A DNA stretch of 63,886 nt, counting the filler, from Octopus bimaculoides (taxonomy: Eukaryota), in the NCBI RefSeq assembly GCF_001194135.2. It is 6 parts of 4 records of this genome, joined end to end, with 100 filler letters (N's around TTAATTAATTAA, not from the genome) between each part and the next. Parts side by side here need not be neighbours in the genome. Positions count along the whole stretch, not along the records: positions 20,917 to 41,030 come from NC_068987.1; 5 more parts are not named here. One strand, given 5' to 3'. Both the position numbers and the translations under genes were made by a program. Shown here in pieces: positions 21,399 through 41,002 of this stretch. The notes under the pieces are model-generated. The model was given only the letters and a program-made list of their open reading frames with translations, did not search any database and had not been told where the DNA came from. Position 1 is the stretch's first letter; each line of letters opens with the position of its first letter.

Positions 21399-21922
21399 AG
21401 CTCTCTTTCTCTATCTCCCTACCTTTCTTTCTCCTCTTTCTTTCTAACTATATATTTCTTTCTCTTCGTCCATTCTTTTTTTTATTTCTCATTTTACATT
21501 TTCTTTTTACTCTTCTAACTAATATTTTTCCTTTGAATTTTACATGATCACTGACACACACACACACAATCACACACACACAAACATATGCATAGACAAA
21601 ACACTCACACATACACTCAAAGCATACAGATATACAGTAACCCCTCGGCATATTGAGGTTCACCTGTCGCGGTTCACCTATCGTGGTTTATTATTTAAGC
21701 TTACGTCGATTCCTCCGTAGTGTTGTTTTGCATTTATAATAAAATAGATATATTTAAAGCAGTTGTTTACTGTCAACTTAATGTGACAGACCCATTAAGG
21801 GAATCATACTGCTGGTATTTAGCCCTAGGAAGCTAGACCGCTTCCTGTTGGCCTTGACACATTTCCTGTGTCCTTATATTTGTGAACGGGAGACAAGCCT
21901 CCCCACCCAGCTTTAGTCTGCA

Positions 21923-21965
21923 TTCAGGGACATGTTTCTGAGTCATTGCTCGTCATCAGCCTGAA
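21923..21965 (-). ncRNA. Minimal type I hammerhead ribozyme motif (mirror copy)
   Basis: Exact reverse complement of 22017-22059. Confidence 0.82.
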
Positions 21966-22016
21966 TTAGCCGACCAGCTGGTTGAAAAAGCATGTCTAGC
22001 CTTCACAAATATATAC

Positions 22017-22059
22017 TTCAGGCTGATGACGAGCAATGACTCAGAAACATGTCCCTGAA
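22017..22059 (+). ncRNA. Minimal type I hammerhead ribozyme motif, predicted GUC cleavage after 22053
   Basis: TTCAGG-CTGATGA-C-GAG(caatga)CTC-A-GAAA-CATG-TC/CCTGAA: perfect 6 bp stem I, intact core, palindromic stem III ACATGT. Confidence 0.85.
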
Positions 22060-22760
22060 TGCAGACTAAAGCTGGGTGGGGAGGCTTGTCTCCCCTTCAC
22101 AAATATAAGGACACAGGAAATGTGTCAAGGCTAACAGGAAGCGGTCCAGCTTCCTAGGGCTAAATAGCAGCAGTATGATTCCCTTAATGGGTCTGTCACA
22201 TTAAGTTGACAATAAACAACTGCTTTATCGTAGCACTGCTGCTTATATCTCTCTGTGAGATTTATAATTAGATCATTTCTAAATATATTCAAATTGTAAA
22301 AATAATTTTAAAAATATACAGTACTGCTTCTACTTCGCGGATTTTCACCTATCGCGGAGTGTTTGGAAACATAACACCCGCGATAGTCAAAGGATTACTG
22401 TAGTACACACAAAACGCATGCATGTAGATGAAACAAATATATAAAACAACACACACGTACAGATCACAATCACTCTGATTTAATATACACTCACATGACA
22501 CATATTCACACACACAAACACACACACACTCACGCATGCACTCACATGTACACACACAAGCACACACACACACATACATTTATACATACATACATACATA
22601 CACTCACACATACATACACACACACACATCCTGTTTCTCTTTATTATCTTGTTCCCACATACACACACGCAACCACACACAAACACACACACAAACTCCG
22701 TCTCTCTCTCACTCTCTCACCATCTCTCTCTCTCTCGCTCTTTCTCTCTCTCTTCCTGTG

Positions 22761-22812
<52 letters not shown>

Positions 22813-23149
22813 CATCAAANNNNNNNNNNTCCTGTGTATATATGTGTGTGTCTGTGTGTGTGTGTGTGTGTGTGTATGTGTGTGTGTGTGTGCATCAAAT
22901 ACAGAGAATAGAATTAACGAGATCCTTTATTCCAAACCACTACAATTGTTTTAACACATTCTCTCACCTGTAGGTTATAGGTGAGATGTTGTGCAGTTAG
23001 TTATCTGCATCACAGGTGCAGAATGCGCTTCCTCAAGTGACTGTTTAAACAAGTTCCTCGCTATATCCTCTCGCCATTTCACTTAACTGTGGTTGAGCTT
23101 TGCACAGCATTCTACACGGTTTTTACCTGAATCTCAACTCGAACGAAGA

Positions 23150-23995
23150 AAAACATCACGAAAATTTATGAACTGACCTTGGTGGTCCGTCACCGAAGAA
23201 TTGACGAACATGTTGATATGACTGGGGTGTTCTGGAGCTCCTCCCAACGGATTTTGAGCGAGGAATTGCGAATGAAAAGAGTTGCAGCAAAATTTGTGCC
23301 TCGTTTGCTCACAGAAGATCAAAAGCAGTCACGACTGAATGCATGTCGTGAACGGAAAAAGCAGTTGGAAGTTGATCCGAACCCTTTTTTCAAAAGTCGT
23401 CACTGGTGACGAAAGGTGTTGCTATGGCTACGACCCGAAACGAAGCAGCAATCAAGTGAAAGGAAGCATTTAATGTTACCACGGCCCCCAAAAATGCGCC
23501 AAATGAAGTCCTATGTGAAGGCGATGCTGATTTGTTTCCTCGGTGCGAAAGGAATTGTCCACACGGTATTTGTTCCTCCTGGTCAAACTGTTAACCAGAC
23601 ATTTTACTTAGCAGTTCTGAAGCGTTTGCGAGACACGGTGAGACGAAAACGCCTCGACCTGTGGCAAAGTGGAGAGTAGTGGTTTCATCACAACAATGCA
23701 CCTTCACACACCGCCTTGAGTGTGAGACAGTTTTTGACCTAAAATGGCATGACCCCGTTTATCCACCCTCCCTCTTCTCCCGATCTTGCTTCCTGCAGCT
23801 TATTTTTGTTTACCCGAATGAAAAAAAGTCCTTAAAGGAAAACGTTTTGCAGATGTGGAAGAGGTGAAGAAAAAATGACGGACGCATTAAAAGGCATCAC
23901 TTTGCAAGAGTTCTAGGACTGCTTCCAACAGTGGAAAACGCATCTTGACCGATGCATTGCTTCAAATGGAGAATACTTTGAAGGTGATAAAAGTG
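23150..23995 (+). mobile_element. Mariner transposase relic (DD34D type), frameshifted
   Basis: Fragments KRVAAKFVPRLLTEDQK, VTGDE, FVPPGQTVNQTFY..LKRLRD, HNNAPSHTA, SPDLAS and DRCIASNGEYFEGD*. Confidence 0.9.
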
Positions 23996-24071
23996 TAAAC
24001 CTGTAAAACTAAGTAAATAAACAATGTTAAATCTCTAAACGAGGTATTAACAGTAACTGCACAATAAGGTG

Positions 24072-24355
24072 AAATATATTTGCCACTTAAATGTGGCTGA
24101 CCCCTAAGGGTGGATGTTACTGTTGCTTTTGCATCGAAGGTCGGCGATTGTCGTACGCTGAGGACGGGAAAATACCAAGAAACTCGAGTCCGTACGTATC
24201 GCAGATCAAGATGGGAAGGATGACTTCCCTTTGCAAATGCAGACAGGACACAGATGTGTGTCGATAGCCAGCTGGAGGAGATGTTCTCCTGGGGCTAAAA
24301 GCAACAGTAACATCCACCCTTAGGGGTCAGCCACATTTAAGTGGCAAATATACTT
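24072..24355 (+). mobile_element. Element D: hammerhead-bearing structured element with a 59 bp inverted copy of its 3' end
   Basis: 24072-24130 is the reverse complement of 24297-24355 (1 mismatch); the 3' region is homologous to the element A arm. Confidence 0.85.
24144..24202 (+). ncRNA. Type I hammerhead ribozyme motif with extended stem I, predicted GUC cleavage after 24190
   Basis: GCGAT-tgt-CGTACG-CTGAGGA-CGGG(aaaata)CCAA-GAAA-CTCGAG-TC/CGTACG-t-ATCGC: stem I CGTACG/CGTACG plus GCGAT/ATCGC, palindromic stem III ACTCGAGT; stem II has only 2 Watson-Crick pairs. Confidence 0.8.
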
Positions 24356-25499
24356 NNNNNNNNNNNNNNNNNNNNNNNNNNNNNNNNNNNNNNNNNNNNN
24401 NNNNNNNNNNNNNNNNNNNNNNNNNNNNNNNNNNNNNNNNNNNNNNNNNNNNNNNNNNNNNNNNNNNNNNNNNNNNNNNNNNNNNNNNNNNNNNNNNNNN
24501 NNNNNNNNNNNNNNNNNNNNNNNNNNNNNNNNNNNNNNNNNNNNNNNNNNNNNNNNNNNNNNNNNNNNNNNNNNNNNNNNNNNNNNNNNNNNNNNNNNNN
24601 NNNNNNNNNNNNNTATATATATACATACATACATACATACATACATACATACATACATACATGCATGCATACATACATACATACATACATACATACAAAG
24701 ACGCATGCAGATGTATATATACATATATGTATATGAGTGTACGTATGCATGTCAGAGTGCTTGCGCGCGTGCGTATGTGTGTATTTCAAATACATTTTTA
24801 GAAAAATGTGTTGATACAGTCATAATATTTTAAAAGGAATTTCTTAAATTAAAAGTTATTACTTATGTAATTATATTAGAAAATCATTTTAAGCGAAAAG
24901 CGGATTAAGACAGACCTGGCAGAAGGGAGGTTTTGAGCCAGCGCTTTTCACTGTTTACAGCTTTTCAAAAATACGTCTTGCTTGCAAAACTGAAAAGAGT
25001 GGAAGCGCTTACAGAAGACTTTCTGCCGTCTAGTTTGTGTTAATTTGTTTTTTAAAAAAAAGACTTTTTTGCGTAATAGATAATCGTTAAATTANNNNNN
25101 NNNNNNNNNNNNNNNNNNNNNNNNNNNNNNNNNNNNNNNNNNNNNNNNNNNNNNNNNNNNNNNNNNNNNNNNNNNNNNNNNNNNNNNNNNNNNTGTGGCC
25201 TGCTTGTTTGTTGCACCTTGTTTACCATTTTTGTCCTTGTTCTTTTGCCACGCCATGTACCCAGTTATGTATCTATATGTACATGTGGATGAACGTATAT
25301 ACATACATGTACATATATATGCATATACTCATATATTGTTTATATATATATATATATATATAGTTATGGTATATTCTGTTAAGAATGTAGTAGAGTACAG
25401 TAGAAAGCTCGTTCACCTTCAGATTTACCCTGTCCTATCCTGTAGTGGCATTATACGTACTTCCAGGTTTGCGTTTGAGCATCTATCGTGTATGAATAC

Positions 25500-25944
25500 A
25501 TAATTGAAAAAATTGGAGTCAACAAGAAGGGGTACGGTTGGACATTTATTTTTTAATCCCAACAATTGTTTCCACGTAACATAGTTCTCCAGGAGTTCAG
25601 GTACTTGATTATGCAATTATTTCCCTGCATTATGAGATCTAGATGTGTCTCCTCAAGCGATATGCAAATATTGAAATCCTCGGCTTCAAGAACATCCCCT
25701 CTGTTTGTCGAGGCCTGACAGACAGGCAGAGGAGATGTTCTTGAAGCCGAGGATTTCAAACTTACGAAGACAATATTTATATATCTCCTGAGGAAACACA
25801 ATTAGATCTCATAATGCAGGGAAACAGTTGCATAATAAAGTACCAACACTCCTGGAGAACTTCGTTCCGTGGAAACAATTGTAGGGATTAAAAAATAAAT
25901 GTCCAATCGTACTCTTTCTTATTGACTCCAATTTTTTCAATTAT
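25500..25944. repeat. Element E: 445 bp imperfect palindrome (~210 bp arms, ~11 bp spacer)
   Basis: ATAATTGAAAAAATTGGAGTCAA.. mirrored at ..TTGACTCCAATTTTTTCAATTAT; ~88% arm identity over the outer 160 bp by eye; ~13 bp indel. Confidence 0.9.
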
Positions 25945-25956
25945 TTTTTCAGTTAT

Positions 25957-26481: not shown

Positions 26482-26975
26482 AGAGAAAAACATAGGGCGA
26501 CTCAGAATGAGAGTGATAAAAAAGATGGCAACAATATAGGAGTTCATCCTTGTTTGGAGATAGACATATGAGGAAGTGATGTAGTGGAGGTGGGATTAGG
26601 GTATATGTATGTGTGTAGAAGTGTGCAAATGCGAAAATATAATGGCATCTGTAATCATTTAGTATATTTTAGGAAAGCGTAAGCGTAGACGTTAGGAGGC
26701 GGAAGCGGGCACAAGTATGAGGTAAAGGAGAAGGCAAGAGAAAGGTAGCGGATATGATAGAAGTGTGTGCAAGGGTATGGGTGTGAGACGCTGTGACATG
26801 GAAGAATGATATATGAACAAAAGAAATGTAAGTAAAAGAAATATTAATTCAGGAAGAGAAGTCAGAGAAAAATTGATTACAAGGCAGTGCCCCAGCATGG
26901 CCGCAGTCTAATGTTTGAATCAAGTAAAACGTAAAAGGTAAAATATACAATACAAGACACTGGTAAAGAGAGAGG

Positions 26976-28061: not shown

Positions 28062-30108
28062 TTCTCGTTAGGCGCGGTCGAGACGATTTTCTGTTTCTTT
28101 CCGATATATATTGTATTTTTAAACAGGACATGTCCATAAGAGATTTTATTCTCGAAAACCCCAGTAACTTGCCAGTCAATGATGTATATACATTACATAT
28201 GATTCTTACATTGCTCTTTTATTTTAATACTGCTTTAATTGAATACACTGGATTATTTTATTGTATTTTTATATATAATTTTATCATCTTTATTTCCCTT
28301 TCAGCAGATCGACAATCCCGTGTCTCCATGTAGCTCTTCAGTTATCATCTATCTCCGTCCTACTTCTTACAAGGATCCCTTGACTGGATAGTACTAAGGC
28401 CATAACTAAGTATTGCAGGACATTTAGTCCAATGCTCTAGTGATTCCGTCAGAACACAAATTAGTGTTCAAATACAGAGCCGATTAATTTGGGACGGAAA
28501 GAATTAAGAATCCGGATGTATGAATAATGCATTTTAGTACTGAAGAGCTTTTTAGTCAAGAAATCTCCAGTCGCTGCTTCCTACCCCCATTAATAACAAA
28601 CACAACAAGCACAACAAAGCAACGACGTGCGTCTATTTGGTCGCTCGACCTACTAAAAATAACAGCTAAATGTTCCTTCTCCTCACATTATGTCTTTGAA
28701 AAAAAACAGAGAGAGAATAGGCGCAGGCGTAGCTGTGTAGTAAGAAGCTTGCTCCCGCTTCCGGTTGTGTCAGTGCTGTTCTTACACTGCAGAAGTCGCC
28801 ACGCTGGTGTACAACTGGCGAAATATTGATTGAAAAAGCTCAGCTGTAAGGTAAGACTTTTGTTTTTGGGGTCCAGTGAGAGTTTGTTGTTTGCTGTATT
28901 TTTTTTGTACAAACAAGAAATCCTCACTGGATTCTGGACTCTGGTCTGCCTATAGTTGGGCAAAATTGTTCACTTTTAAGTAAATTATTTTGGTGGGCGG
29001 ATCTTCTGCCGCCATAAACTGTGGAATTCTTTTTGCTGCTATGAAAAAAAAATTTTCTTCGTTGTGTATTTACCATTTAATGATAAATTTTGTTTGTTCC
29101 NNNNNNNNNNNNNNNNNNNNNNNNNNNNNNNNNNNNNNNNNNNNNNNNNNNNNNNNNNNNNNNNNNNNNNNNNNNNNNNNNNNNNNNNNNNNNNNNNNNN
29201 NNNNNNNNNNNNNNNNNNNNNNNNNNNNNNNNNNNNNNNNNNNNNNNNNNNNNNNNNNNNNNNNNNNNNNNNNNNNNNNNNNNNNNNNNNNNNNNNNNNN
29301 NNNNNNNNNNNNNNNNNNNNNNNNNNNNNNNNNNNNNNNNNNNNNNNNNNNNNNNNNNNNNNNNNNNNNNNNNNNNNNNNNNNNNNNNNNNNNNNNNNNN
29401 NNNNNNNNNNNNNNNNNNNNNNNNNNNNNNNNNNNNNNNNNNNNNNNNNNNNNNNNNNNNNNNNNNNNNNNNNNNNNNNNNNNNNNNNNNNNNNNNNNNN
29501 NNNNNNNNNNNNNNNNNNNNNNNNNNNNNNNNNNNNNNNNNNNNNNNNNNNNNNNNNNNNNNNNNNNNNNNNNNNNNNNNNNNNNNNNNNNNNNNNNNNN
29601 NNNNNNNNNNNNNNNNNNNNNNNNNNNNNNNNNNNNNNNNNNNNNNNNNNNNNNNNNNNNNNNNNNNNNNNNNNNNNNNNNNNNNNNNNNNNNNNNNNNN
29701 NNNNNNNNNNNNNNNNNNNNNNNNNNNNNNNNNNNNNNNNNNNNNNNNNNNNNNNNNNNNNNNNGATACTGAATTTGAAGAGGACTATGAGTAAGAGGTT
29801 GCAAAGCCTCGATATTGTGAACTGATAAGAGGTTTGAAACCTCATTCTGTTTTTAACCAAGGTACGAGGCGTAGTGCCTCATTTTTGTGTTTTAATGAAC
29901 AATTATGAACAATTGTAAGAGGTTTATTGCCTCTTGTATGATAAATAAGAGAACAATGTTTTCGGGAAACAACAATCGGCGGGCGTTGTCTGTTTCCCCT
30001 ATTAATCATCATTTTCACTTTTCATCTCATATAACATTATGTCTGTGTCCAGCCCGCAGCTTCCTTCTTTCGCTATGTAAAGCTATTATAGCCAATTTAA
30101 TGAAATAA

Positions 30109-30497
30109 AGAAGCTTGCTTCCCAACCACATGGTTCCGGGTTCAGTCCCACTGCGTGACACCTTGGGCAAGTGTCTTCTACTGTAGCCTCGGATCGACCA
30201 AAGCTTTGCGAGTGGATTCGATAGACAGAAACTCAAAGGAGCCCGTCGTATATGTATGTGTGTATGTGTGTGTATATATTTACGTGTATGTGTCTTTGTG
30301 TTTGCCCCTCCATCACTTGACAACAGATGTTGGCGTGTTTACGTCCCCGTAACTTAGCTTCCGACAAAAGAACCGATAGAATAAGTACGAGGCTTATAAA
30401 GAATAAGTCCTGGGGTCGATTTCTTCGAATGAAAGGTGGTACTCCAGCTTGGCCGCAGTCAAATGACTGAAACAAATAAAAGAATAAAAGAATAAAA
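30109..30497 (+). mobile_element. SINE-1, 5' end clipped
   Basis: AAGCTTGCTTCCCAACCACATGGTTCCGGGTTCAGTCCC.. through the (AAAAGAAT)n tail. Confidence 0.92.
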
Positions 30498-31363
30498 TAA
30501 TAGAATGTATATCAGACAATGCGTAGTTTTTGATTCTTTGATATATTGTTTAAATAAAATATAGGGTGGTCATAACTGGAACGCCTTCCTTTCTAGGTCT
30601 GCTCAATCACTGCCGGCCTGAAACTAAATGACTATAAATCAGTACACAACAATAATATTTATATACATAACATGAATTATGTTTAAATAAATATTGAAAT
30701 ACAAGCATATACACAGTAGCCTACTTATGGTCTAAACAGTGACAGCTGGCGGCGGGTATTGGACTAATAACCGAGATGTCGACACATTATATCCTGTAAC
30801 TCATCTATAGAGGATCTGTGTAGGTATCTATCATGTCACACACACACACACACACGTTTCGTTAGAGCTTTGGACAGAATGCTTGACAGTATTTGTTTGA
30901 GCTCTGTGTTCTGAATTCAAATCCCGCCATGGTCAACTTTGTCTTTCATCCTTTCTGCTAATAATATATCCAATGTCTGTGATTATAAAATGGCGTTTTA
31001 TTGGGTTTGTGGTGTAGCTAATANNNNNNNNNNNNNNNNNNNNNNNNNNNNNNNNNNNNNNNNNNNNNNNNNNNNNNNNNNNNNNNNNNNNNNNNNNNNN
31101 NNNNNNNNNNNNNNNNNNNNNNNNNNNNNNNNNNNNNNNNNNNNNNNNNNNNNNNNNNNNNNNNNNNNNNNNNNNNNNNNNNNNNNNNNNNNNNNNNNNN
31201 NNNNNNNNNNNNNNNNNNNNNNNNNNNNNNNNNNNNNNNNNNNNNNNNNNNNNNNNNNNNNNNNNNNNNNNNNNNNNNNNNNNNNNNNNNNNNNNNNNNN
31301 NNNNNNNNNNNNNNNNNNNNNNNNNNNNNNNNNNNNNNNNNNNNNNNNNNNNNNNNNNNNNNN

Positions 31364-31398
<35 letters not shown>

Positions 31399-32131
31399 GT
31401 TATGCTTTCATGCATTCGGGGAGATTTCGTTGCTATTGTTAGCAGGTCAACTAACTAAGTAGAGGTTCTCTCGTTCGCTCCTTCGAATAAAATGGTCGCT
31501 AATCAAAGTTATAAACGTTTTATAGTAAACAGGAAGCATGGGTTCAATGTCGGTAATATGACAGTGGTGAACTCTTGTTTCGTTCAGCAACCAAGAAATA
31601 GCATTTGTATGACACAAAGGCAAACTACCCGCGTGTTAGTCTTTACTAGTGACAAACTGGATGGTCGTGTGCTCAACCAATGTTTTCCATTATCGTTTAC
31701 GTTGTTGTTTAGCCCCATGTTAAACTTGATAGAGCAAGTCTATGATCAGATATATTCCAGCCATAACTACATCGTCTCTTAGGGAAACCAAGGATTAGAT
31801 CATTCAATTCAATCTTGTTTCAAATCCTTTGGGATGGGAGGTGGGGTGATGCGATACGGAAGCTACGCGATACTTTTTGTGAAGCAAAATAGTAATTCAT
31901 CAACTAAATCCTAAATATGCACATGCATACGTATGCGTGTGTGTGTATATATACACATGTATGTGAGCATGAGGTATATGTGTAAATATATATATATCGT
32001 GTGTATACACATACATACATACATAAATACACACACACACACACGCACACACACACACACACACATAAAATTAACAGAATGAGATAAAAATCCAAGGCTG
32101 TGAAAGATTTCAGAAGATTTATAAATAAAAG

Positions 32132-32180
32132 GTCTTACAGCTGTTTCCGGGATATTTTATATATCCCTATCATCGGAGAC
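32132..32180 (-). ncRNA. Hammerhead motif, U4C variant
   Basis: GTCT-CCGATGA-TA-GGGATAT(ataaa)ATATCCC-G-GAAA-CAGCTG-TA/AGAC: perfect 7 bp stem II, palindromic ACAGCTGT. Confidence 0.65.
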
Positions 32181-32265
32181 GGTGTGAGAAAATGATTAAG
32201 CAATAGTTATTCTAGATAAGATATGAAATAAAGAGTGATATTTTGCTTCACCATTTTCTCACACC

Positions 32266-32314
32266 GTCTCCGATGAAGGGATATATTAAAATTTCTCGGA
32301 AACAGCTGTAAGAC
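32266..32314 (+). ncRNA. Hammerhead motif, U4C variant, predicted GUA site after 32310
   Basis: GTCT-CCGATGA-A-GGGATAT(attaa)AATTTCTC-G-GAAA-CAGCTG-TA/AGAC. Confidence 0.65.
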
Positions 32315-32390
32315 CTATTTATAAATCTTCTAACATCTTTCACAGCCTTGGATTTTTATTTCATTCTGTTAATTTTTCTATATATACACA

Positions 32391-36690: not shown

Positions 36691-37826
36691 GAACTGAGGA
36701 TGGGGTTCAAGTATTCTATGATCTGGTTAAGTCAAGACATTCAATGCAATCTCACTCAAAAATGAACAAAGGGGAAGTTCTGTCCACGAATATTTAAGCC
36801 GAGATATCCTCCTCCTTCAGCACAGAGCAGGCCAGAGGCCACGACCAGTAGGTTTTTCCATTCATCTTGCAATGATGAAGAAGGATTAAAGGATTAACAG
36901 TAGTGACAACTGTCGCTAACAGTGCCAGAAAACAAAACAAACGCAAGAAAATGAGAAAGCTAACCAAAGACGAAGAAGATTAATACACAAGAGCAGGAGA
37001 CCATTGACGGTTTTTGAAAAGTCAATAATATAGCACATGTGTGACAGTGTGGTAACAAGTTTGCTTCCCAAGCACGTCATTCTGGATTCAGTCTCACTGT
37101 GTGGCACCTTGGGCAAGTCTCTTCTGCTGTAGCCCCGGGCCGACTAAAGCCTTGCGATCTTTTCTGTTTGACTGCCAATTTTCAATCTCTTCAATTTTTG
37201 TTCGAACTGATTTCATATTCGGTGTCACAGACACATTCATGCCTCTTCCCATAGTAACAAGCCAAACATGAGAACTCTTTTGTCTGCGAGAAAGCACGAG
37301 TTGACAAATATATTCCATTTACTGACTTGGTGGTGAGATGTGCTAAAAATAACAGCTAAATAGGCCTTAAATCACGCATCCCCAGATTTTTTGTTTCGGT
37401 GTTTGCATAATCGTATGAATTCCTGCGTGTAGAATACAAATTCGCGAAAATTTTCTGAAAATTCCAAAAAATAAAAAATTCATGAAGGATTATATGGTTA
37501 TATGCCTAAAGCAGAATTCTACCAGTATTTCATTTGTTTACAGTTGACAATACGAGCTGTCATGCACAAAATGACAGCTTCCAAATTTTGTTTCCTAACT
37601 GAGTGAAAATGATCAAACTTTAAAACTCTACAACTTTTTAAAAACAACTTTTCTGAAAAAAGTGAAATATCTCCTGAGATTCAGGTTGGAAAACTACATT
37701 AATGTACCAAATTTTAAAATTTCCAATAAACTTCAAATTTCGAAAATGTGTAGGCATTTATTGTGAGTGTATTCATCCAGTAGACGAAATCTGAAAGAAG
37801 CCCGTCGTGTGTGCGTGCGTGCGTGC

Positions 37827-39340: not shown

Positions 39341-41002
39341 AGACACCAACTTGCAGTTCCTCTGACCAACATCTGGAGAAATTCTTTAGACTCAGGTTAT
39401 ATACCGAAACAGCTCCTATCCCAGTCTGTCATCCCGGTTTTCAAACAAGGAAACAGATCCCTCGCAGTCAACTATCGCCCAATCTCACTCACCTCCCACA
39501 TCATTAAAGTGTTTGAAAGGGTAGTAAGATCAAGGATAGCTGACTTCCTGGAGACCCACAAACTCCTAAATGCAAACCAGCATGGCTTTCGCTGTGGCAA
39601 GGACTGTCTAACACAGCTCTTACACCACATTGAAGATATACTTAAAGCCTTGGGAACAGGCTCGGACGCTGATGTCATATATCTTGACTTCAGTAAAGCC
39701 TTCGACAGGGTTGACCATAATATCTTACTCGCAAAATTGGCAAAAGTTGGAATCCATGGAAAACTTCTACACTGGATTAAGTATTTCCTGGAGAACATAA
39801 CACAAGAAGTTGTGGTCGATGGAGTCCACTCAAGCCCAGCAAAAGTCACCAGTGGTGTCCCTCAGGGGACTGTCTTAGGCCCGCTCCTCTTTATAATTTA
39901 TATAAATGACCTTTCCACCGTCGTAAATCACTGCAAAGTGAAAATATTTGCTGATGACACTAAGCTCCAGCAAATCATCAATTTAGAAGAAGACCGATCC
40001 CAACTCCAGACTGATCTATATGCTGTGAGTCAATGGGCAGATAAAAACAAAATGAAAGTGAACGAGGGAAAATTTGAGCTGATGCATTTTGGAAGAAAGT
40101 CTGTACTAAAACAGCCATACTCTCTTCCTTCAGGGGAACCGCTCACGGCATCCAATAATATCAGTGATCTGGGTGTAATTGTTGACAACAATCTCAACTG
40201 GAGTGCCCACATCAACAATAAGGTCAATATAGTTGGTAGGATGAGCTCCTGGATCTTAAGAACCTTCCGGTCCAGAGAACAAGGTGTCATCATTCCACTT
40301 TTCTCCTCCTTTGTACGGCCACACCTCGAATACTGCTGCCCTTTGTGGTCTCCCCATNNNNNNNNNNCCACTTTTCTCCTCCTTTGTACGGCCACACCTC
40401 GAATACTGCTGCCCTTTGTGGTCTCCCCATACTAAACATAACTTCTCGAGGATTGTATCACCCCAGAGGGCACTCACTAAACGAATTGAAGGCATGACCG
40501 ATATTGATTACTGGGACCGCCTTAAAGCCTTGAAGCTCTACTCTCTCCAGCGCCGCCGCGAGCGGTACATCATCTATACGATGTGGAAAATATACCACCA
40601 GCATTGCCCAAACGACCTGAACATTAGTTTCAAGGTTCATCCAAGGCTGAGACCACAAGCCATACGTCCCCTGCCCAATTCATGATCACAACATATAGGT
40701 ACACTGCGGCATAATTTCTTTTCCTCAACAGGCCCTGCCGTGTTTAACGTTGTCCCGAAACAGATAAAAGAAGAAAAGGATCCTATCAGTTTTAAACGGA
40801 GTCTAGATAGATTTCTTCAAAGAATACCAGACAAGCCACCCATACCTGGATACAACTCACTCAATAAGAACTCACTACTTGAATGGACCATAGACCAAAC
40901 TTGACAGTAAAAAGGATTTAGATAATCCTATCAGGTGGTGCTATTAAGTTAGACACGGCTTGGACCAATCTTTGGTCGAAACATATCTAAGTTTATCTAA
41001 GT
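39341..41002 (+). mobile_element. CR1-group LINE 3' portion (RT domain, 3' UTR, TCTAAGTTTA tail repeats)
   Basis: ORF 39509-40435 has YRPISLT, QHGFR, YLDFSKAFDRVDH, SGVPQGTVLGPLLF, FADDTK and RPHLEYCCPLWSP; terminal hairpin GACCAA..TTGGTC. Confidence 0.93.

What the first reader, a model, noticed from the sequence alone, without database searches (positions are those of the whole stretch)
22017..24355. Family of hammerhead-headed structured RNA elements with co-varying 3' hairpins (A and D)
Seen: the ~165 nt downstream of the hammerheads in A (22060-22227) and D (24203-24355) align despite strong divergence, and the stems are conserved while the loops vary. H1: GGGGAG/CTCCCC vs GGGAAG/CTTCCC. 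H2: GACACA/TGTGTC in both, loops GGAAA vs GATG. H3: AGGAAGC/GCTTCCT vs AGGAGA/TCTCCT. Then a shared linker GGGCTAAA(T)AGCA(G/A)CAGTA and a CCCTTA..GGG hairpin. Terminal hairpin: GTCA/TGAC vs GCCA/TGGC. Three hairpins (H1, H3, terminal) carry compensatory pair swaps. The hammerheads also differ entirely in stems I-III yet keep the core and a palindromic stem III. Established: Penelope-like elements and retrozymes carry minimal type I hammerheads with palindromic stem III that can cleave as dimers. Inference: a non-coding, self-cleaving, RT-recruiting RNA family under structural selection, which I do not recognise as described.
Basis: partly seen in the sequence, partly recalled or inferred. Interest (0 to 1): 0.9.

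Follow-up and report, generated by a model that had tools for sequence, protein, structure and literature searches.

The report
Penelope-like retroelement ends with hammerheads
Two diverged, back-to-back pairs of short retrotransposon fragments each start at a minimal hammerhead ribozyme and run into a conserved set of RNA hairpins; this is the layout of truncated Penelope-like elements, a known class, so the finding is real but mostly ordinary.

Summary
A (22014-22285) and D (24139-24355) are homologous (about 62-64% identity, E 6e-13). Both keep a type I hammerhead core with a palindromic helix III. Both keep the same row of hairpins downstream, and some stem pairs change on both sides at once. 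49 of 57 modelled pairs survive, against 28.9 +/- 3.4 under random placement of the same substitutions.

Each locus is a head-to-head inverted pair of copies, with the hammerhead (5') ends meeting in the middle and the 3' ends facing outward. The three copies that still contain the hammerhead region begin 3 to about 45 nt upstream of it. A roughly 35-58 nt 3' "tail" is present on A-right and D-left but absent from A-left.

Penelope-like elements (PLEs) are published as having all of these traits: a minimal hammerhead, an adjacent inverted 5'-truncated copy and a tail at one end only. Published biochemistry also shows RNA binding and internal initiation of reverse transcription just downstream of the hammerhead.

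I read both loci as dead, truncated copies from two subfamilies of a PLE or a PLE-dependent element. "Self-cleaving, RT-recruiting RNA" is plausible, but "undescribed" is not. No RT/GIY-YIG ORF and no further copies could be reached, so the PLE link is architectural only. D's apparent end at 24355 is an assembly gap.

The parts
21755..21968 (-). A-left: an inverted copy in the short form (no tail). Its hammerhead lies at 21923-21965 (-). Its upstream homology continues into the spacer to about 21983.
   Evidence: The arm is 97% complementary to 22014-22227 (I1) and differs at 6 positions. The core is found at 21929-21959 (-). GGTCGGC upstream of the hammerhead is shared with D.
21969..22013 (.). 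The 45-nt junction between the two A copies. It contains the 8-nt palindrome CCAGCTGG (21976-21983) and a decayed fragment resembling the H1 region.
   Evidence: D17 (79% to 22070-22107); nhmmer E 0.03.
22014..22285 (+). A-right: a direct copy in the long form (with tail). It is 5'-truncated 3 nt upstream of the hammerhead. Its 3' end is uncertain, somewhere in 22261-22285.
   Evidence: nhmmer 22014-22285, E 6e-76.
22017..22059 (+). The type I minimal hammerhead of A. Stem I is 22017-22022 / 22054-22059. The core is CUGAUGA followed by an extra C. Stem II is GAG/CUC. Then come A-GAAA and the palindromic helix III ACAUGU. The predicted cut is after C22053.
   Evidence: There is no Rfam match at E up to 10.
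22078..22211 (+).
   Evidence: MFE and centroid folds, alifold on the hand alignment, pair counts and hairpin excess over shuffles.
22212..22228 (+). An A/U hairpin, AUAAA-CAACUGC-UUUAU. The short-form copy (A-left) ends at the position equivalent to 22227, at the 3' foot of this hairpin. It is a candidate proximal start site for reverse transcription.
   Evidence: The parallel with the stem-loop initiation site of PAc (PMC11167929) is inference.
22228..22285 (+). The 'tail', present on A-right and D-left but absent from A-left. It holds the 3' strand of the candidate long-range helix P5 (22235-22243, pairing with 22166-22174) and hairpin P7 (22247-22261).
   Evidence: D-left (reverse complement) aligns to 22163-22269 at 67%, E 2.7e-7, and on to about 22278. 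Folds; coordinates.
24005..24130 (-). D-left: an inverted, strongly 5'-truncated copy that starts inside the linker upstream of P5 and carries the tail. Its outer end is uncertain, somewhere in 24005-24031.
   Evidence: I10 (59 nt, 98%); (nhmmer 24007-24130, E 7.5e-31).
24139..24355 (+). D-right: a direct copy that starts about 13-20 nt upstream of its hammerhead. Its 3' end is lost in the N gap at 24356-24613.
   Evidence: E 2e-59.
24152..24196 (+). The type I minimal hammerhead of D. Stem I is CGUACG/CGUACG and the core is CUGAGGA followed by an extra C. Stem II is weak (2 bp plus G.A). Then come A-GAAA and the palindromic helix III ACUCGAGU. The predicted cut is after C24190.
   Evidence: Rfam RF00163 scores 20.2 bits, E 0.0045 in a 71-nt search, below the gathering score of 34.
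24213..24346 (+). The conserved hairpin array of D: H1 24213-24229, H2 24247-24262, P3a 24266-24269 / 24293-24296 enclosing P3b 24276-24290, P4 24317-24326 and P6 24329-24346.

Best explanation
A and D are two separate, fairly recent insertions. They come from two diverged subfamilies of one hammerhead-bearing retroelement of the Penelope-like (PLE) type. The parent could be an autonomous PLE or a short element that uses PLE machinery. Each insertion is a pair of 5'-truncated copies lying head to head, with the 3' ends outward.

What the copies contain is the 3'-terminal RNA module of the parent: a minimal type I hammerhead followed by about 170-230 nt of hairpins.

Inferred mechanism, by analogy with published PLE biochemistry:
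1. The parent is transcribed.
2. The hammerhead has a helix III too short to fold alone but palindromic. It is therefore active only when two copies pair, probably with help from the element's protein, and it cuts after GUC.
3. The hairpin array downstream is the platform that the reverse transcriptase binds.
4. cDNA synthesis starts internally at one of two sites about 35-58 nt apart. This gives copies with the tail (A-right, D-left) or without it (A-left).
5. The GIY-YIG nuclease cuts both strands of AT-rich target DNA, and both 3' ends are extended. The two cDNAs grow toward each other and are joined at their truncated 5' ends. This yields exactly the arrangement seen: left arm on the minus strand, right arm on the plus strand.

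Shown here: the anatomy, the homology, the conservation of the hammerhead core, and the retention of the hairpins with compensatory changes.

Inferred: cleavage, RT binding, the two start sites, extension of both strands, and the PLE identity of the parent.
For: Both loci have the same arrangement: an inverted left copy and a direct right copy, with hammerheads inside and 3' ends outside (I1 and I10).

The inner ends differ. A-right starts 3 nt upstream of the hammerhead, D-right about 13-20 nt upstream, A-left about 15 nt or more upstream, and D-left inside the linker. That pattern is 5' truncation, not fixed termini.

The tail is present on A-right and D-left and absent from A-left.

The flanks are AT-rich and close to microsatellites.

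The hammerhead has the published traits of PLE hammerheads: an extra nucleotide after A9, a short palindromic helix III, and high variability of the stems with the core kept (PMC4209133). The core is identical in A and D except at the free position N7, although the elements differ at 38% of sites.

The two arms of each pair differ by only 1.7-2.8%, while A and D differ by about 38%. Two long-separated lineages were therefore both active recently, and both kept the structure. 49 of 57 pairs are kept against 28.9 +/- 3.4, and there are 11 double changes against 3.4.

Hairpins are in clear excess over shuffles. The plus strand folds better than the minus strand: -80.0 and -70.6 against -75.3 and -62.0 kcal/mol.

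A computed dimer pairs through the palindromic helix III: -24.6 against 2 x -9.1 kcal/mol for A.

Literature:
- Inverted 5'-truncated copy, one-sided 30-40 bp tail and assembly trouble: PMC8557442.
- Dual hammerheads on opposite strands 100-700 bp apart, attributed to truncated PLEs: PMC4209133.
- Both target strands cut and extended, internal RT initiation at two sites that bracket the tail, the RNA determinant downstream of the hammerhead, and a protein-assisted hammerhead: PMC11167929.
Against: There is no RT or GIY-YIG ORF in the 20-kb piece. The only protein-domain hits are a mariner transposase remnant and a CR1-like LINE RT.

No copy could be linked to an autonomous element, because no other copies were reachable.

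There are only two independent lineages. Compensatory changes in the 3' module alone are marginal (6 against 2.8, p about 0.05), and the alignment was guided by the structure.

Both hammerheads fall short of Rfam's threshold. Both carry an unusual extra A before G12, and D's stem II has a G.A at the 10.1-11.1 position.

The tail here (about 35-58 nt) is somewhat longer than the published 30-40 bp. No clear target-site duplication was found.

The three copies that still contain the hammerhead region start within about 45 nt upstream of it. This could also mean the parent is itself short.
Confidence: 0.7

Rival explanations
1. The elements are monomers of a non-LTR 'retrozyme'. This would be a short (about 300 nt), non-autonomous, hammerhead-bearing repeat that is normally tandem, is processed to circular RNA and is copied back into DNA by PLE machinery. 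On this reading the structured region is the self-paired body of the circle.
For: The length, low GC content (42-49%), type I hammerhead and strong self-pairing fit the published description (PMC7229834). Retrozymes derive from PLE pLTRs and often occur as dispersed monomers (bioRxiv 10.64898/2026.07.22.740005). The three copies that contain the hammerhead region begin within about 45 nt upstream of it.
Against: There is no head-to-tail repeat at either locus; the only partner copies are inverted. The sequence upstream of the hammerhead (GGTCGGC...) does not resemble the 3' tail, as it would in a tandem unit. The hammerhead is the minimal PLE kind, without a loop 1 and so without the loop 1-loop 2 contacts. 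The 2020 paper separates that kind from the canonical retrozyme hammerheads (PMC7229834).
Confidence: 0.18
2. The elements are foldback or MITE-type DNA transposons with long terminal inverted repeats. On this reading the hammerhead-like motif and the hairpins are incidental features of the DNA.
For: A looks like a 473-bp palindrome with 214-nt arms at 97%. Other palindromic elements without hammerheads occur in the same piece, at 25493-25951 and 32067-32376. Every hairpin also exists on the opposite strand.
Against: The arms are unequal and differ between loci: 214/214(+58) nt in A against 126/217 or more in D. The outer ends differ within A, because the tail is on one side only. There is no target-site duplication at the repeat boundaries. 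The asymmetric hammerhead core is kept intact across 38% divergence, with 4 double changes in stem I. Chance or DNA-level symmetry does not explain that.
Confidence: 0.05
3. The elements are host non-coding RNA genes, for example hairpin RNA or small-RNA precursors, or a hammerhead with a host regulatory role, kept by selection at these loci.
For: A's long perfect hairpin gives sub-threshold matches to plant miRNA precursor models: MIR1882 at 75 bits (gathering 107) and MIR5380 at 55 bits (gathering 150). A transcript through A would form a double-stranded RNA of about 214 bp.
Against: Those matches only reflect a long hairpin and fall below the gathering scores. The loci lie in repeat-rich, gap-ridden intergenic DNA among a mariner fossil, a LINE and microsatellites. 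The two loci are paralogous dispersed repeats with variable truncation, which is the behaviour of a mobile element.
Confidence: 0.03

Closest known systems
Minimal hammerhead ribozymes in the pseudo-LTRs of Penelope-like elements (Cervera & De la Pena 2014, PMC4209133; dimer cleavage by Lunse et al. 2016, cited in PMC6765202)
   Same: Type I topology. Conserved CUGANGA / GAAA / GUC core. An extra nucleotide between A9 and stem II. A very short, palindromic helix III that implies action as a dimer. Extreme stem variability with compensatory changes. Frequent occurrence as isolated motifs, or as two motifs on opposite strands 100-700 bp apart, from truncated PLEs.
   Different: There is an extra A between stem II and G12 in both copies. 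Stem II is short (3 bp in A, 2 bp in D), whereas many PLE hammerheads have 6-8 bp. The Rfam score is sub-threshold. No flanking PLE ORF is seen here.
Insertion architecture of PLEs: partial tandems, an adjacent inverted 5'-truncated copy and a 30-40 bp tail at one end (Craig et al. 2021, PMC8557442)
   Same: An inverted 5'-truncated copy lies directly upstream of a direct copy at both loci. The 3' extension is present at one end only in A. The loci sit near microsatellites and assembly gaps.
   Different: No partial tandem (pLTR) and no ORF are present, and both members of each pair are very short. The tail is about 35-58 nt. Target-site duplications cannot be determined.
The template RNA module of the Anolis Poseidon element PAc (Frangieh et al. 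2024, PMC11167929)
   Same: The order of parts matches: hammerhead, then a roughly 100-200 nt RNA needed for protein binding, then internal RT start sites in a stem-loop, with the tail lying between the two start sites. Extension of both target strands would explain head-to-head pairs.
   Different: There is no sequence similarity. In PAc this region is the start of the ORF, whereas here it is non-coding. Here the distance from the cut site to the short-form end is 174 nt, against about 85-92 nt in PAc. Nothing was tested biochemically here.
Metazoan non-LTR retrozymes (Cervera & de la Pena 2020, PMC7229834; Li et al. 2026 preprint, 10.64898/2026.07.22.740005)
   Same: Short, AT-leaning, non-coding, highly self-paired units with a type I hammerhead, evolutionarily tied to PLE pLTRs. 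Monomers are dispersed in genomes.
   Different: Retrozymes are defined by head-to-tail repeats and circular RNA, and they mostly carry canonical hammerheads with loop-loop contacts. None of these features is seen here.
L1 twin priming (Ostertag & Kazazian 2001; from my own knowledge, not checked here)
   Same: Both ends of one target break prime cDNA synthesis, producing inverted segments joined at microhomology.
   Different: L1 twin priming gives one element with an inverted 5' part. Here there are two copies of the same 3' module facing each other.

Membership tests
Hammerhead ribozyme, type I (PLE minimal variant) | Conserved catalytic core C3-U4-G5-A6-N7-G8-A9, G12-A13-A14, A15.1/U16.1 and a cleavable H17 | tested here: met
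   CUGAUGA...GAAA-C..G-UC in A (both arms) and CUGAGGA...GAAA-C..G-UC in D. They differ only at the free position N7.
Hammerhead ribozyme, type I (PLE minimal variant) | Stem I formed by the 5' and 3' flanks (type I topology) | tested here: met
   6 bp in both copies, with 4 of the 6 pairs changed on both sides between A and D.
Hammerhead ribozyme, type I (PLE minimal variant) | Stem II with a G10.1-C11.1 pair; PLE variants have an unpaired nucleotide after A9 | tested here: inconclusive
   The extra C after A9 is present in both. A has G-C, A-U and G-C pairs, but only if an extra A before G12 is tolerated. D has G.A at the first pair and only 2 bp.
Hammerhead ribozyme, type I (PLE minimal variant) | Short helix III with a palindromic sequence (dimer-competent) | tested here: met
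   ACAUGU in A and ACUCGAGU in D. The computed dimer pairs through these palindromes.
Hammerhead ribozyme, type I (PLE minimal variant) | Reaches the gathering score of Rfam RF00163 | tested here: not met
   D scores 20.2 bits against a gathering score of 34. A gives no match at E up to 10, and there is none in the whole-piece scan. Published PLE minimal hammerheads were found with relaxed RNAmotif descriptors, not covariance models (PMC4209133); whether they reach this threshold was not checked here.
Hammerhead ribozyme, type I (PLE minimal variant) | Self-cleavage | not testable with these tools
   This needs in vitro transcription of monomer and dimer constructs.
Penelope-like element (PLE) | A single ORF with a telomerase-like RT and a GIY-YIG endonuclease | tested here: inconclusive
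   There is none in the piece 20917-41030; the ORF scan finds only PF01359 (mariner) and a LINE PF00078. Copies truncated this far would not carry the ORF. Linking them to an ORF needs the source genome.
Penelope-like element (PLE) | A hammerhead motif in the terminal (pLTR) region | tested here: met
   Homology continues about 10-20 nt upstream of the hammerhead.
Penelope-like element (PLE) | Strong 5' truncation, with an inverted 5'-truncated copy directly adjacent | tested here: met
   Seen at both loci (I1 and I10). There are four different inner end points.
Penelope-like element (PLE) | An optional 30-40 bp tail at one end only | tested here: met
   A-right extends about 35-58 nt beyond the end of A-left, and this extension is homologous to the end of D-left. 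It is somewhat longer than published. D-right cannot be read because of the gap.
Penelope-like element (PLE) | Partial tandem forming pseudo-LTRs | tested here: not met
   There is no direct repeat of the unit at either locus. This is expected for short truncated copies, so it is weak evidence either way.
Non-LTR retrozyme | Head-to-tail repeats of a 150-450 bp unit, each with a hammerhead | tested here: not met
   Only inverted partners are present. The region upstream of the hammerhead is unlike the 3' tail.
Non-LTR retrozyme | Expression as circular RNA | not testable with these tools
   No RNA data are available.
Foldback / MITE DNA transposon | Fixed terminal inverted repeats shared by copies, flanked by target-site duplications | tested here: not met
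   Arm lengths and both the inner and outer ends differ between and within loci. There is no duplication at the repeat boundaries.

The most novel reading that the evidence does not exclude
The roughly 210 nt downstream of the hammerhead cut site form a distinct RNA fold that has not yet been characterised. It consists of H1, H2, a bipartite P3 and P4-P6 enclosed by a long-range helix P5, followed by P7. This fold would be the recognition and initiation platform for a PLE-type reverse transcriptase. P5 pairs the conserved GCARCAGU linker with the tail and would act as a switch between the two start sites for cDNA synthesis. The family could also be a short, SINE-like parasite of PLE machinery that inserts as head-to-head pairs because both strands of the target break are extended.
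Probability: 0.25. Interest if true: 0.55.

Novelty: new member of a known kind. Interest (0 to 1): 0.3.

Why it matters
How Penelope-like elements copy themselves is still poorly understood. The RNA features that their reverse transcriptase recognises have been mapped in only one element (PMC11167929).

This window holds two diverged lineages that keep the same hairpin order downstream of the hammerhead. One pair also shows both the tail-less and the tailed 3' end. Together these give a concrete structural hypothesis for that recognition platform, and for how extension of both target strands could produce head-to-head pairs.

As a genome feature, however, this is an ordinary dead retroelement fragment. 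Its main practical value is for repeat annotation: such palindromic pairs are easily mistaken for MITEs or hairpin RNA genes.

Tried and rejected
- **Rfam on the whole piece.** This gave only low-complexity and hairpin matches to miRNA models, all below gathering scores. I rejected them as artefacts of microsatellites and of A's long hairpin.
- **More copies inside the piece.** blastn with short words and an nhmmer profile of the hand alignment found only the four copies plus the spacer fragment.
- **Copies elsewhere.** I scanned metagenome contigs (73 loci) and viral contigs (17 loci) with the conserved linker pattern GGGCTAAA(N)AGCARCAGTA. None shows any extended similarity to A or D, so these are chance matches.
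- **Identifying the organism.** Searching with the LINE RT gave a best relative at only 55% identity. One related 97-kb animal contig (L091) has no copy of the element. The source genome is not represented, so genome-wide covariation could not be tested.
- **Target-site duplications.** Only ambiguous AT-rich similarity was found (ATATATT near 21746 and 22289), and I do not claim it.
- **A host MITE around A.** The inverted termini TACAGTAAYCC at 21632 and 22405 align over only about 26 nt, which is weak.
- **Strand assignment from G-U pairs.** There was no signal: 3 such pairs on each strand.
- **A reading frame starting in hammerhead stem II, as in PAc.** A has an ATG there, but the frame stops after 33 codons, and D has no ATG.
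- **The hammerhead-like core at 28540.** It has no stem I and is chance.
- **Literature.** Supplements of PMC4209133 and the Lunse et al. paper are not held.
Full report
**What is in the sequence.** The piece 20917-41030 is repeat-rich, AT-leaning (39% GC) animal intergenic DNA with many microsatellites and ten runs of N.

The finding covers two loci.

- **Locus A is a near-perfect palindrome.** Its arms, 21755-21968 and 22014-22227, are 214 nt long and 97% complementary, with 45 nt between them (I1).
- **Locus D is built the same way, with unequal arms.** An inverted copy at 24005-24130 abuts a direct copy at 24139-24355 (I10).
- **The two loci are homologous.** A and D are 64% identical over about 220 nt by blastn (E 6e-13) and 62% (159/255) in my structure-guided alignment.
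- **There are no further copies in the piece.** An nhmmer profile finds exactly these four copies, plus a weak fragment in A's spacer.

**The gaps.**

- The gap at 22820-22829 lies in (GT)n DNA between the loci. The 66 nt before it recur almost exactly as the 70 nt after it.
- The only other 10-N gap (40358-40367) is flanked by an exact 63-nt duplicate.
- Both therefore look like unmerged contig overlaps. Neither touches the elements, and the region is non-coding, so no reading frame is at stake.
- The 258-N gap at 24356-24613 does matter.

**The hammerheads.**

- **The core is found three times.** The core pattern occurs at 22023-22053 (+), at its mirror 21929-21959 (-), and at 24158-24190 (+). 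A fourth match at 28540 lacks stem I. In all there are four matches against 0.25 expected.
- **The core is kept while stem I varies.** Between A and D the core is identical except at the free position N7. Stem I stays at 6 bp although four of its six pairs are replaced on both sides.
- **Helix III is palindromic.** It is a 6-nt palindrome in A and an 8-nt palindrome in D, too short to close on its own. A computed homodimer pairs through it: -24.6 against 2 x -9.1 kcal/mol for A, and -26.1 against 2 x -10.9 for D.
- **Both match published PLE traits.** Both copies have an extra C after A9. That extra nucleotide, the palindromic helix III and the variable stems are listed as non-designed hallmarks of PLE hammerheads (PMC4209133).
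- **There are departures from the canonical form.** Both have an extra A before G12. Stem II is short, and in D it starts with a G.A.
- **Rfam's type I model does not reach threshold.** It gives D 20.2 bits (gathering 34) and nothing for A.
- **I therefore call these PLE-type minimal hammerhead motifs.** They were probably functional in the parent lineages, but activity is unproven, and published examples are poor cleavers even as dimers (PMC4209133, PMC6765202, PMC11167929).

| Helix | In A | Notes |
|---|---|---|
| H1 | 22078-22095 | one G-C to A-U swap |
| H2 | 22110-22126 | stem identical, loop differs |
| P4 | 22181-22191 | stem pairs identical in A and D |
| P6 | 22194-22211 | terminal hairpin; one U-A to C-G swap |
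| A/U hairpin | 22212-22228 | sits at the short-form 3' end |
| P5 (candidate) | 22166-22174 with 22235-22243 | pairs the conserved GCAGCAGT linker with the tail |
| P7 | 22247-22261 | hairpin in the tail |

Statistics on the module:

- **Perfect hairpins of at least 5 bp are in excess.** A has six in 203 nt against 0.97 +/- 0.9 in dinucleotide shuffles (0 of 2000). D has four in 159 nt against 0.71 (1 of 2000).
- **Far more pairs are kept than expected.** I redistributed the observed number of substitutions at random over the alignment. This keeps 28.9 +/- 3.4 of 57 pairs, whereas 49 are observed (0 of 20000). For the 3' module alone the figures are 24.1 +/- 3.2 against 41 of 48.
- **Double changes are significant overall but marginal downstream.** There are 11 against 3.4 overall (1 of 20000). 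Downstream of the hammerhead there are only 6 against 2.8 (about 5% of trials).
- **The plus strand folds better than the minus strand.** MFE is -80.0 and -70.6 against -75.3 and -62.0 kcal/mol, and z-scores are -2.7 and -3.1 against -2.3 and -2.0.
- **Wobble pairs give no strand signal.** The strand call rests mainly on the asymmetric hammerhead core.
- **The module is non-coding.** All six frames of A-right have stops, and the alignment needs many indels that are not multiples of three.
- **The caveats are serious.** There are only two independent lineages, and the alignment was fitted by eye to the structure.

**Why the structure signal is meaningful despite two lineages.** The arms within a pair differ by 2.8% in A (6/214) and 1.7% in D (1/59). 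A and D differ by about 38%.

- Each pair arose in one event, so both insertions are young relative to the split between the two lineages.
- Two long-separated parent lineages were therefore both still mobile, and both kept the hammerhead core and the hairpin order.
- The differences between A and D thus mostly record evolution under selection in active elements, not decay after insertion.

**What it is.** The anatomy matches, point for point, what is published for Penelope-like elements.

- **Truncation and inverted partner copies.** PLE insertions are strongly 5'-truncated. Often an inverted 5'-truncated copy lies immediately adjacent, so that inverted repeats flank the unit.
- **A one-sided tail and assembly trouble.** A 30-40 bp tail is often present at one end only, and such loci break short-read assemblies (PMC8557442).
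- **The same features appear here.**
  - The inner ends are at four different positions: 3 nt, about 13-20 nt and at least 15 nt upstream of the hammerhead, and, for D-left, far downstream inside the linker.
  - The 3' ends face outward at both loci.
  - A-right carries about 35-58 nt that A-left lacks. This extension is homologous to the outer end of D-left (67% over 110 nt, E 2.7e-7; extended).
- **Paired hammerheads on opposite strands are already described.** Cervera and De la Pena reported pairs of minimal hammerheads 100-700 bp apart on opposite strands and attributed them to truncated PLEs (PMC4209133). The two hammerheads of A are 63 nt apart.
- **The main gap in the evidence is the parent ORF.** I could not find an RT/GIY-YIG ORF. 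The piece holds only a mariner transposase fossil and a CR1-like LINE RT. The source genome is not in any collection I could search.
- **The PLE assignment is therefore architectural, and I put it at about 0.7.** That figure includes the possibility that the parent is a short non-autonomous derivative.

**How it most likely works (inference from PMC11167929).** In the Anolis element PAc:

- The hammerhead sits just upstream of an RNA stretch (the first 172 nt after it) that is needed for protein binding.
- Reverse transcription starts internally, at two adjacent sites in a stem-loop, and the tail is the sequence between them.
- The hammerhead cleaves only with protein present.
- The protein cuts and extends both strands of an AT-rich target.

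Transferred to this family:

- The hairpin array would be the RT platform.
- The short form ends at 22227, at the 3' foot of the AUAAA-CAACUGC-UUUAU hairpin. The long form ends after P7.
- Extension from both 3' ends of one break would lay down two antisense cDNAs growing toward each other. The result is a minus-strand copy on the left and a plus-strand copy on the right with the truncated 5' ends meeting in the middle, which is what both loci show.
- Because the two cDNAs are identical rather than complementary, joining would be easiest at palindromes. A's junction does contain the 8-nt palindrome CCAGCTGG.

None of these steps was tested here.

**Unexplained.**

- **A's 45-nt spacer can be read two ways.** On the plus strand it is a 79% match to A's own H1 region, but with the hairpin destroyed. 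That makes it much more diverged than the arms are from each other. On the minus strand it is the continuation of A-left upstream of its hammerhead. It could reflect a template switch or insertion into an older copy, and I cannot say which.
- **P5 is weakly supported.** It rests on six shared pairs, one double change and register extensions at opposite ends in A and D, in only two tail-bearing sequences.

**Rivals.**

- **Retrozyme monomer (0.18).** Size and self-pairing fit, but the defining head-to-tail repeat and the canonical hammerhead are missing.
- **Foldback or MITE DNA transposon (0.05).** This is contradicted by the unequal, variable arms and by conservation of an asymmetric ribozyme core.
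- **Host hairpin-RNA gene (0.03).** The only support is sub-threshold miRNA-model matches that any long hairpin produces.

**Verdict.** This is a new member, in this unidentified genome, of a known kind. The residual interest lies in the conserved multi-hairpin platform and the candidate tail-pairing helix, both of which need many more copies to test.

Noticed in passing
23179-23980 (+): A mariner-type transposase pseudogene lies between A and D. ORF fragments match PF01359 (E 8e-10), and the frame is broken by stops and frameshifts. No terminal inverted repeats were detectable. D-left abuts its 3' side.
   Followed up: partly
39509-40685 (+): A CR1-like LINE reverse transcriptase (PF00078, E 1e-27; it carries the ...VRPHLEYCCPLWSP motif). 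Its best relative among 5.8 billion proteins is only 55% identical, so the source genome is not represented there. It is interrupted by a 10-N gap at 40358-40367 flanked by an exact 63-nt duplicate, which is an assembly artefact.
   Followed up: partly
25493-25951: Another palindromic element with 181-nt arms (87% complementary) and a 97-nt spacer. It has no hammerhead core and is MITE- or foldback-like. The stretch 22935-23040, just upstream of the mariner fossil, is 66% similar to one of its arms (E 7e-4).
   Followed up: no
32067-32376: A roughly 310-bp element made of nested inverted repeats (61-nt arms at 95%, 77-nt arms at 83%), flanked by (CA)n. Its nature is unknown.
   Followed up: no
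26881-26947 and 30433-30499; also 30108-30211 / 37054-37157: Dispersed SINE-like repeat tails (...CCAGCATGGCCGCAGTC.AATG..TGAA.CAA.TAAAAG...). From memory only, I associate this sequence with octopus genomes. If that is right, PLEs are a documented repeat class there (PMC13282606). The organism was not verified. ARAGORN finds no tRNA-like heads.
   Followed up: partly
21632-21700 and 22335-22405: A lies between weak inverted termini (TACAGTAAYCC...) with repeated TTCACCTATCGYGG motifs, so it may have inserted into a MITE of about 240 bp. The termini align over only about 26 nt.
   Followed up: partly
21969-22013: The spacer between A's arms contains a decayed copy of the element's own H1 region next to the palindrome CCAGCTGG. 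This could be a template-switch scar or an older copy that served as the target.
   Followed up: partly
21755-22227: A transcript running through A would fold into a double-stranded RNA hairpin of about 214 bp. That would bury both hammerheads and would be a plausible substrate for small-RNA pathways or A-to-I editing. It is the reason for the sub-threshold MIR1882 and MIR5380 matches.
   Followed up: no
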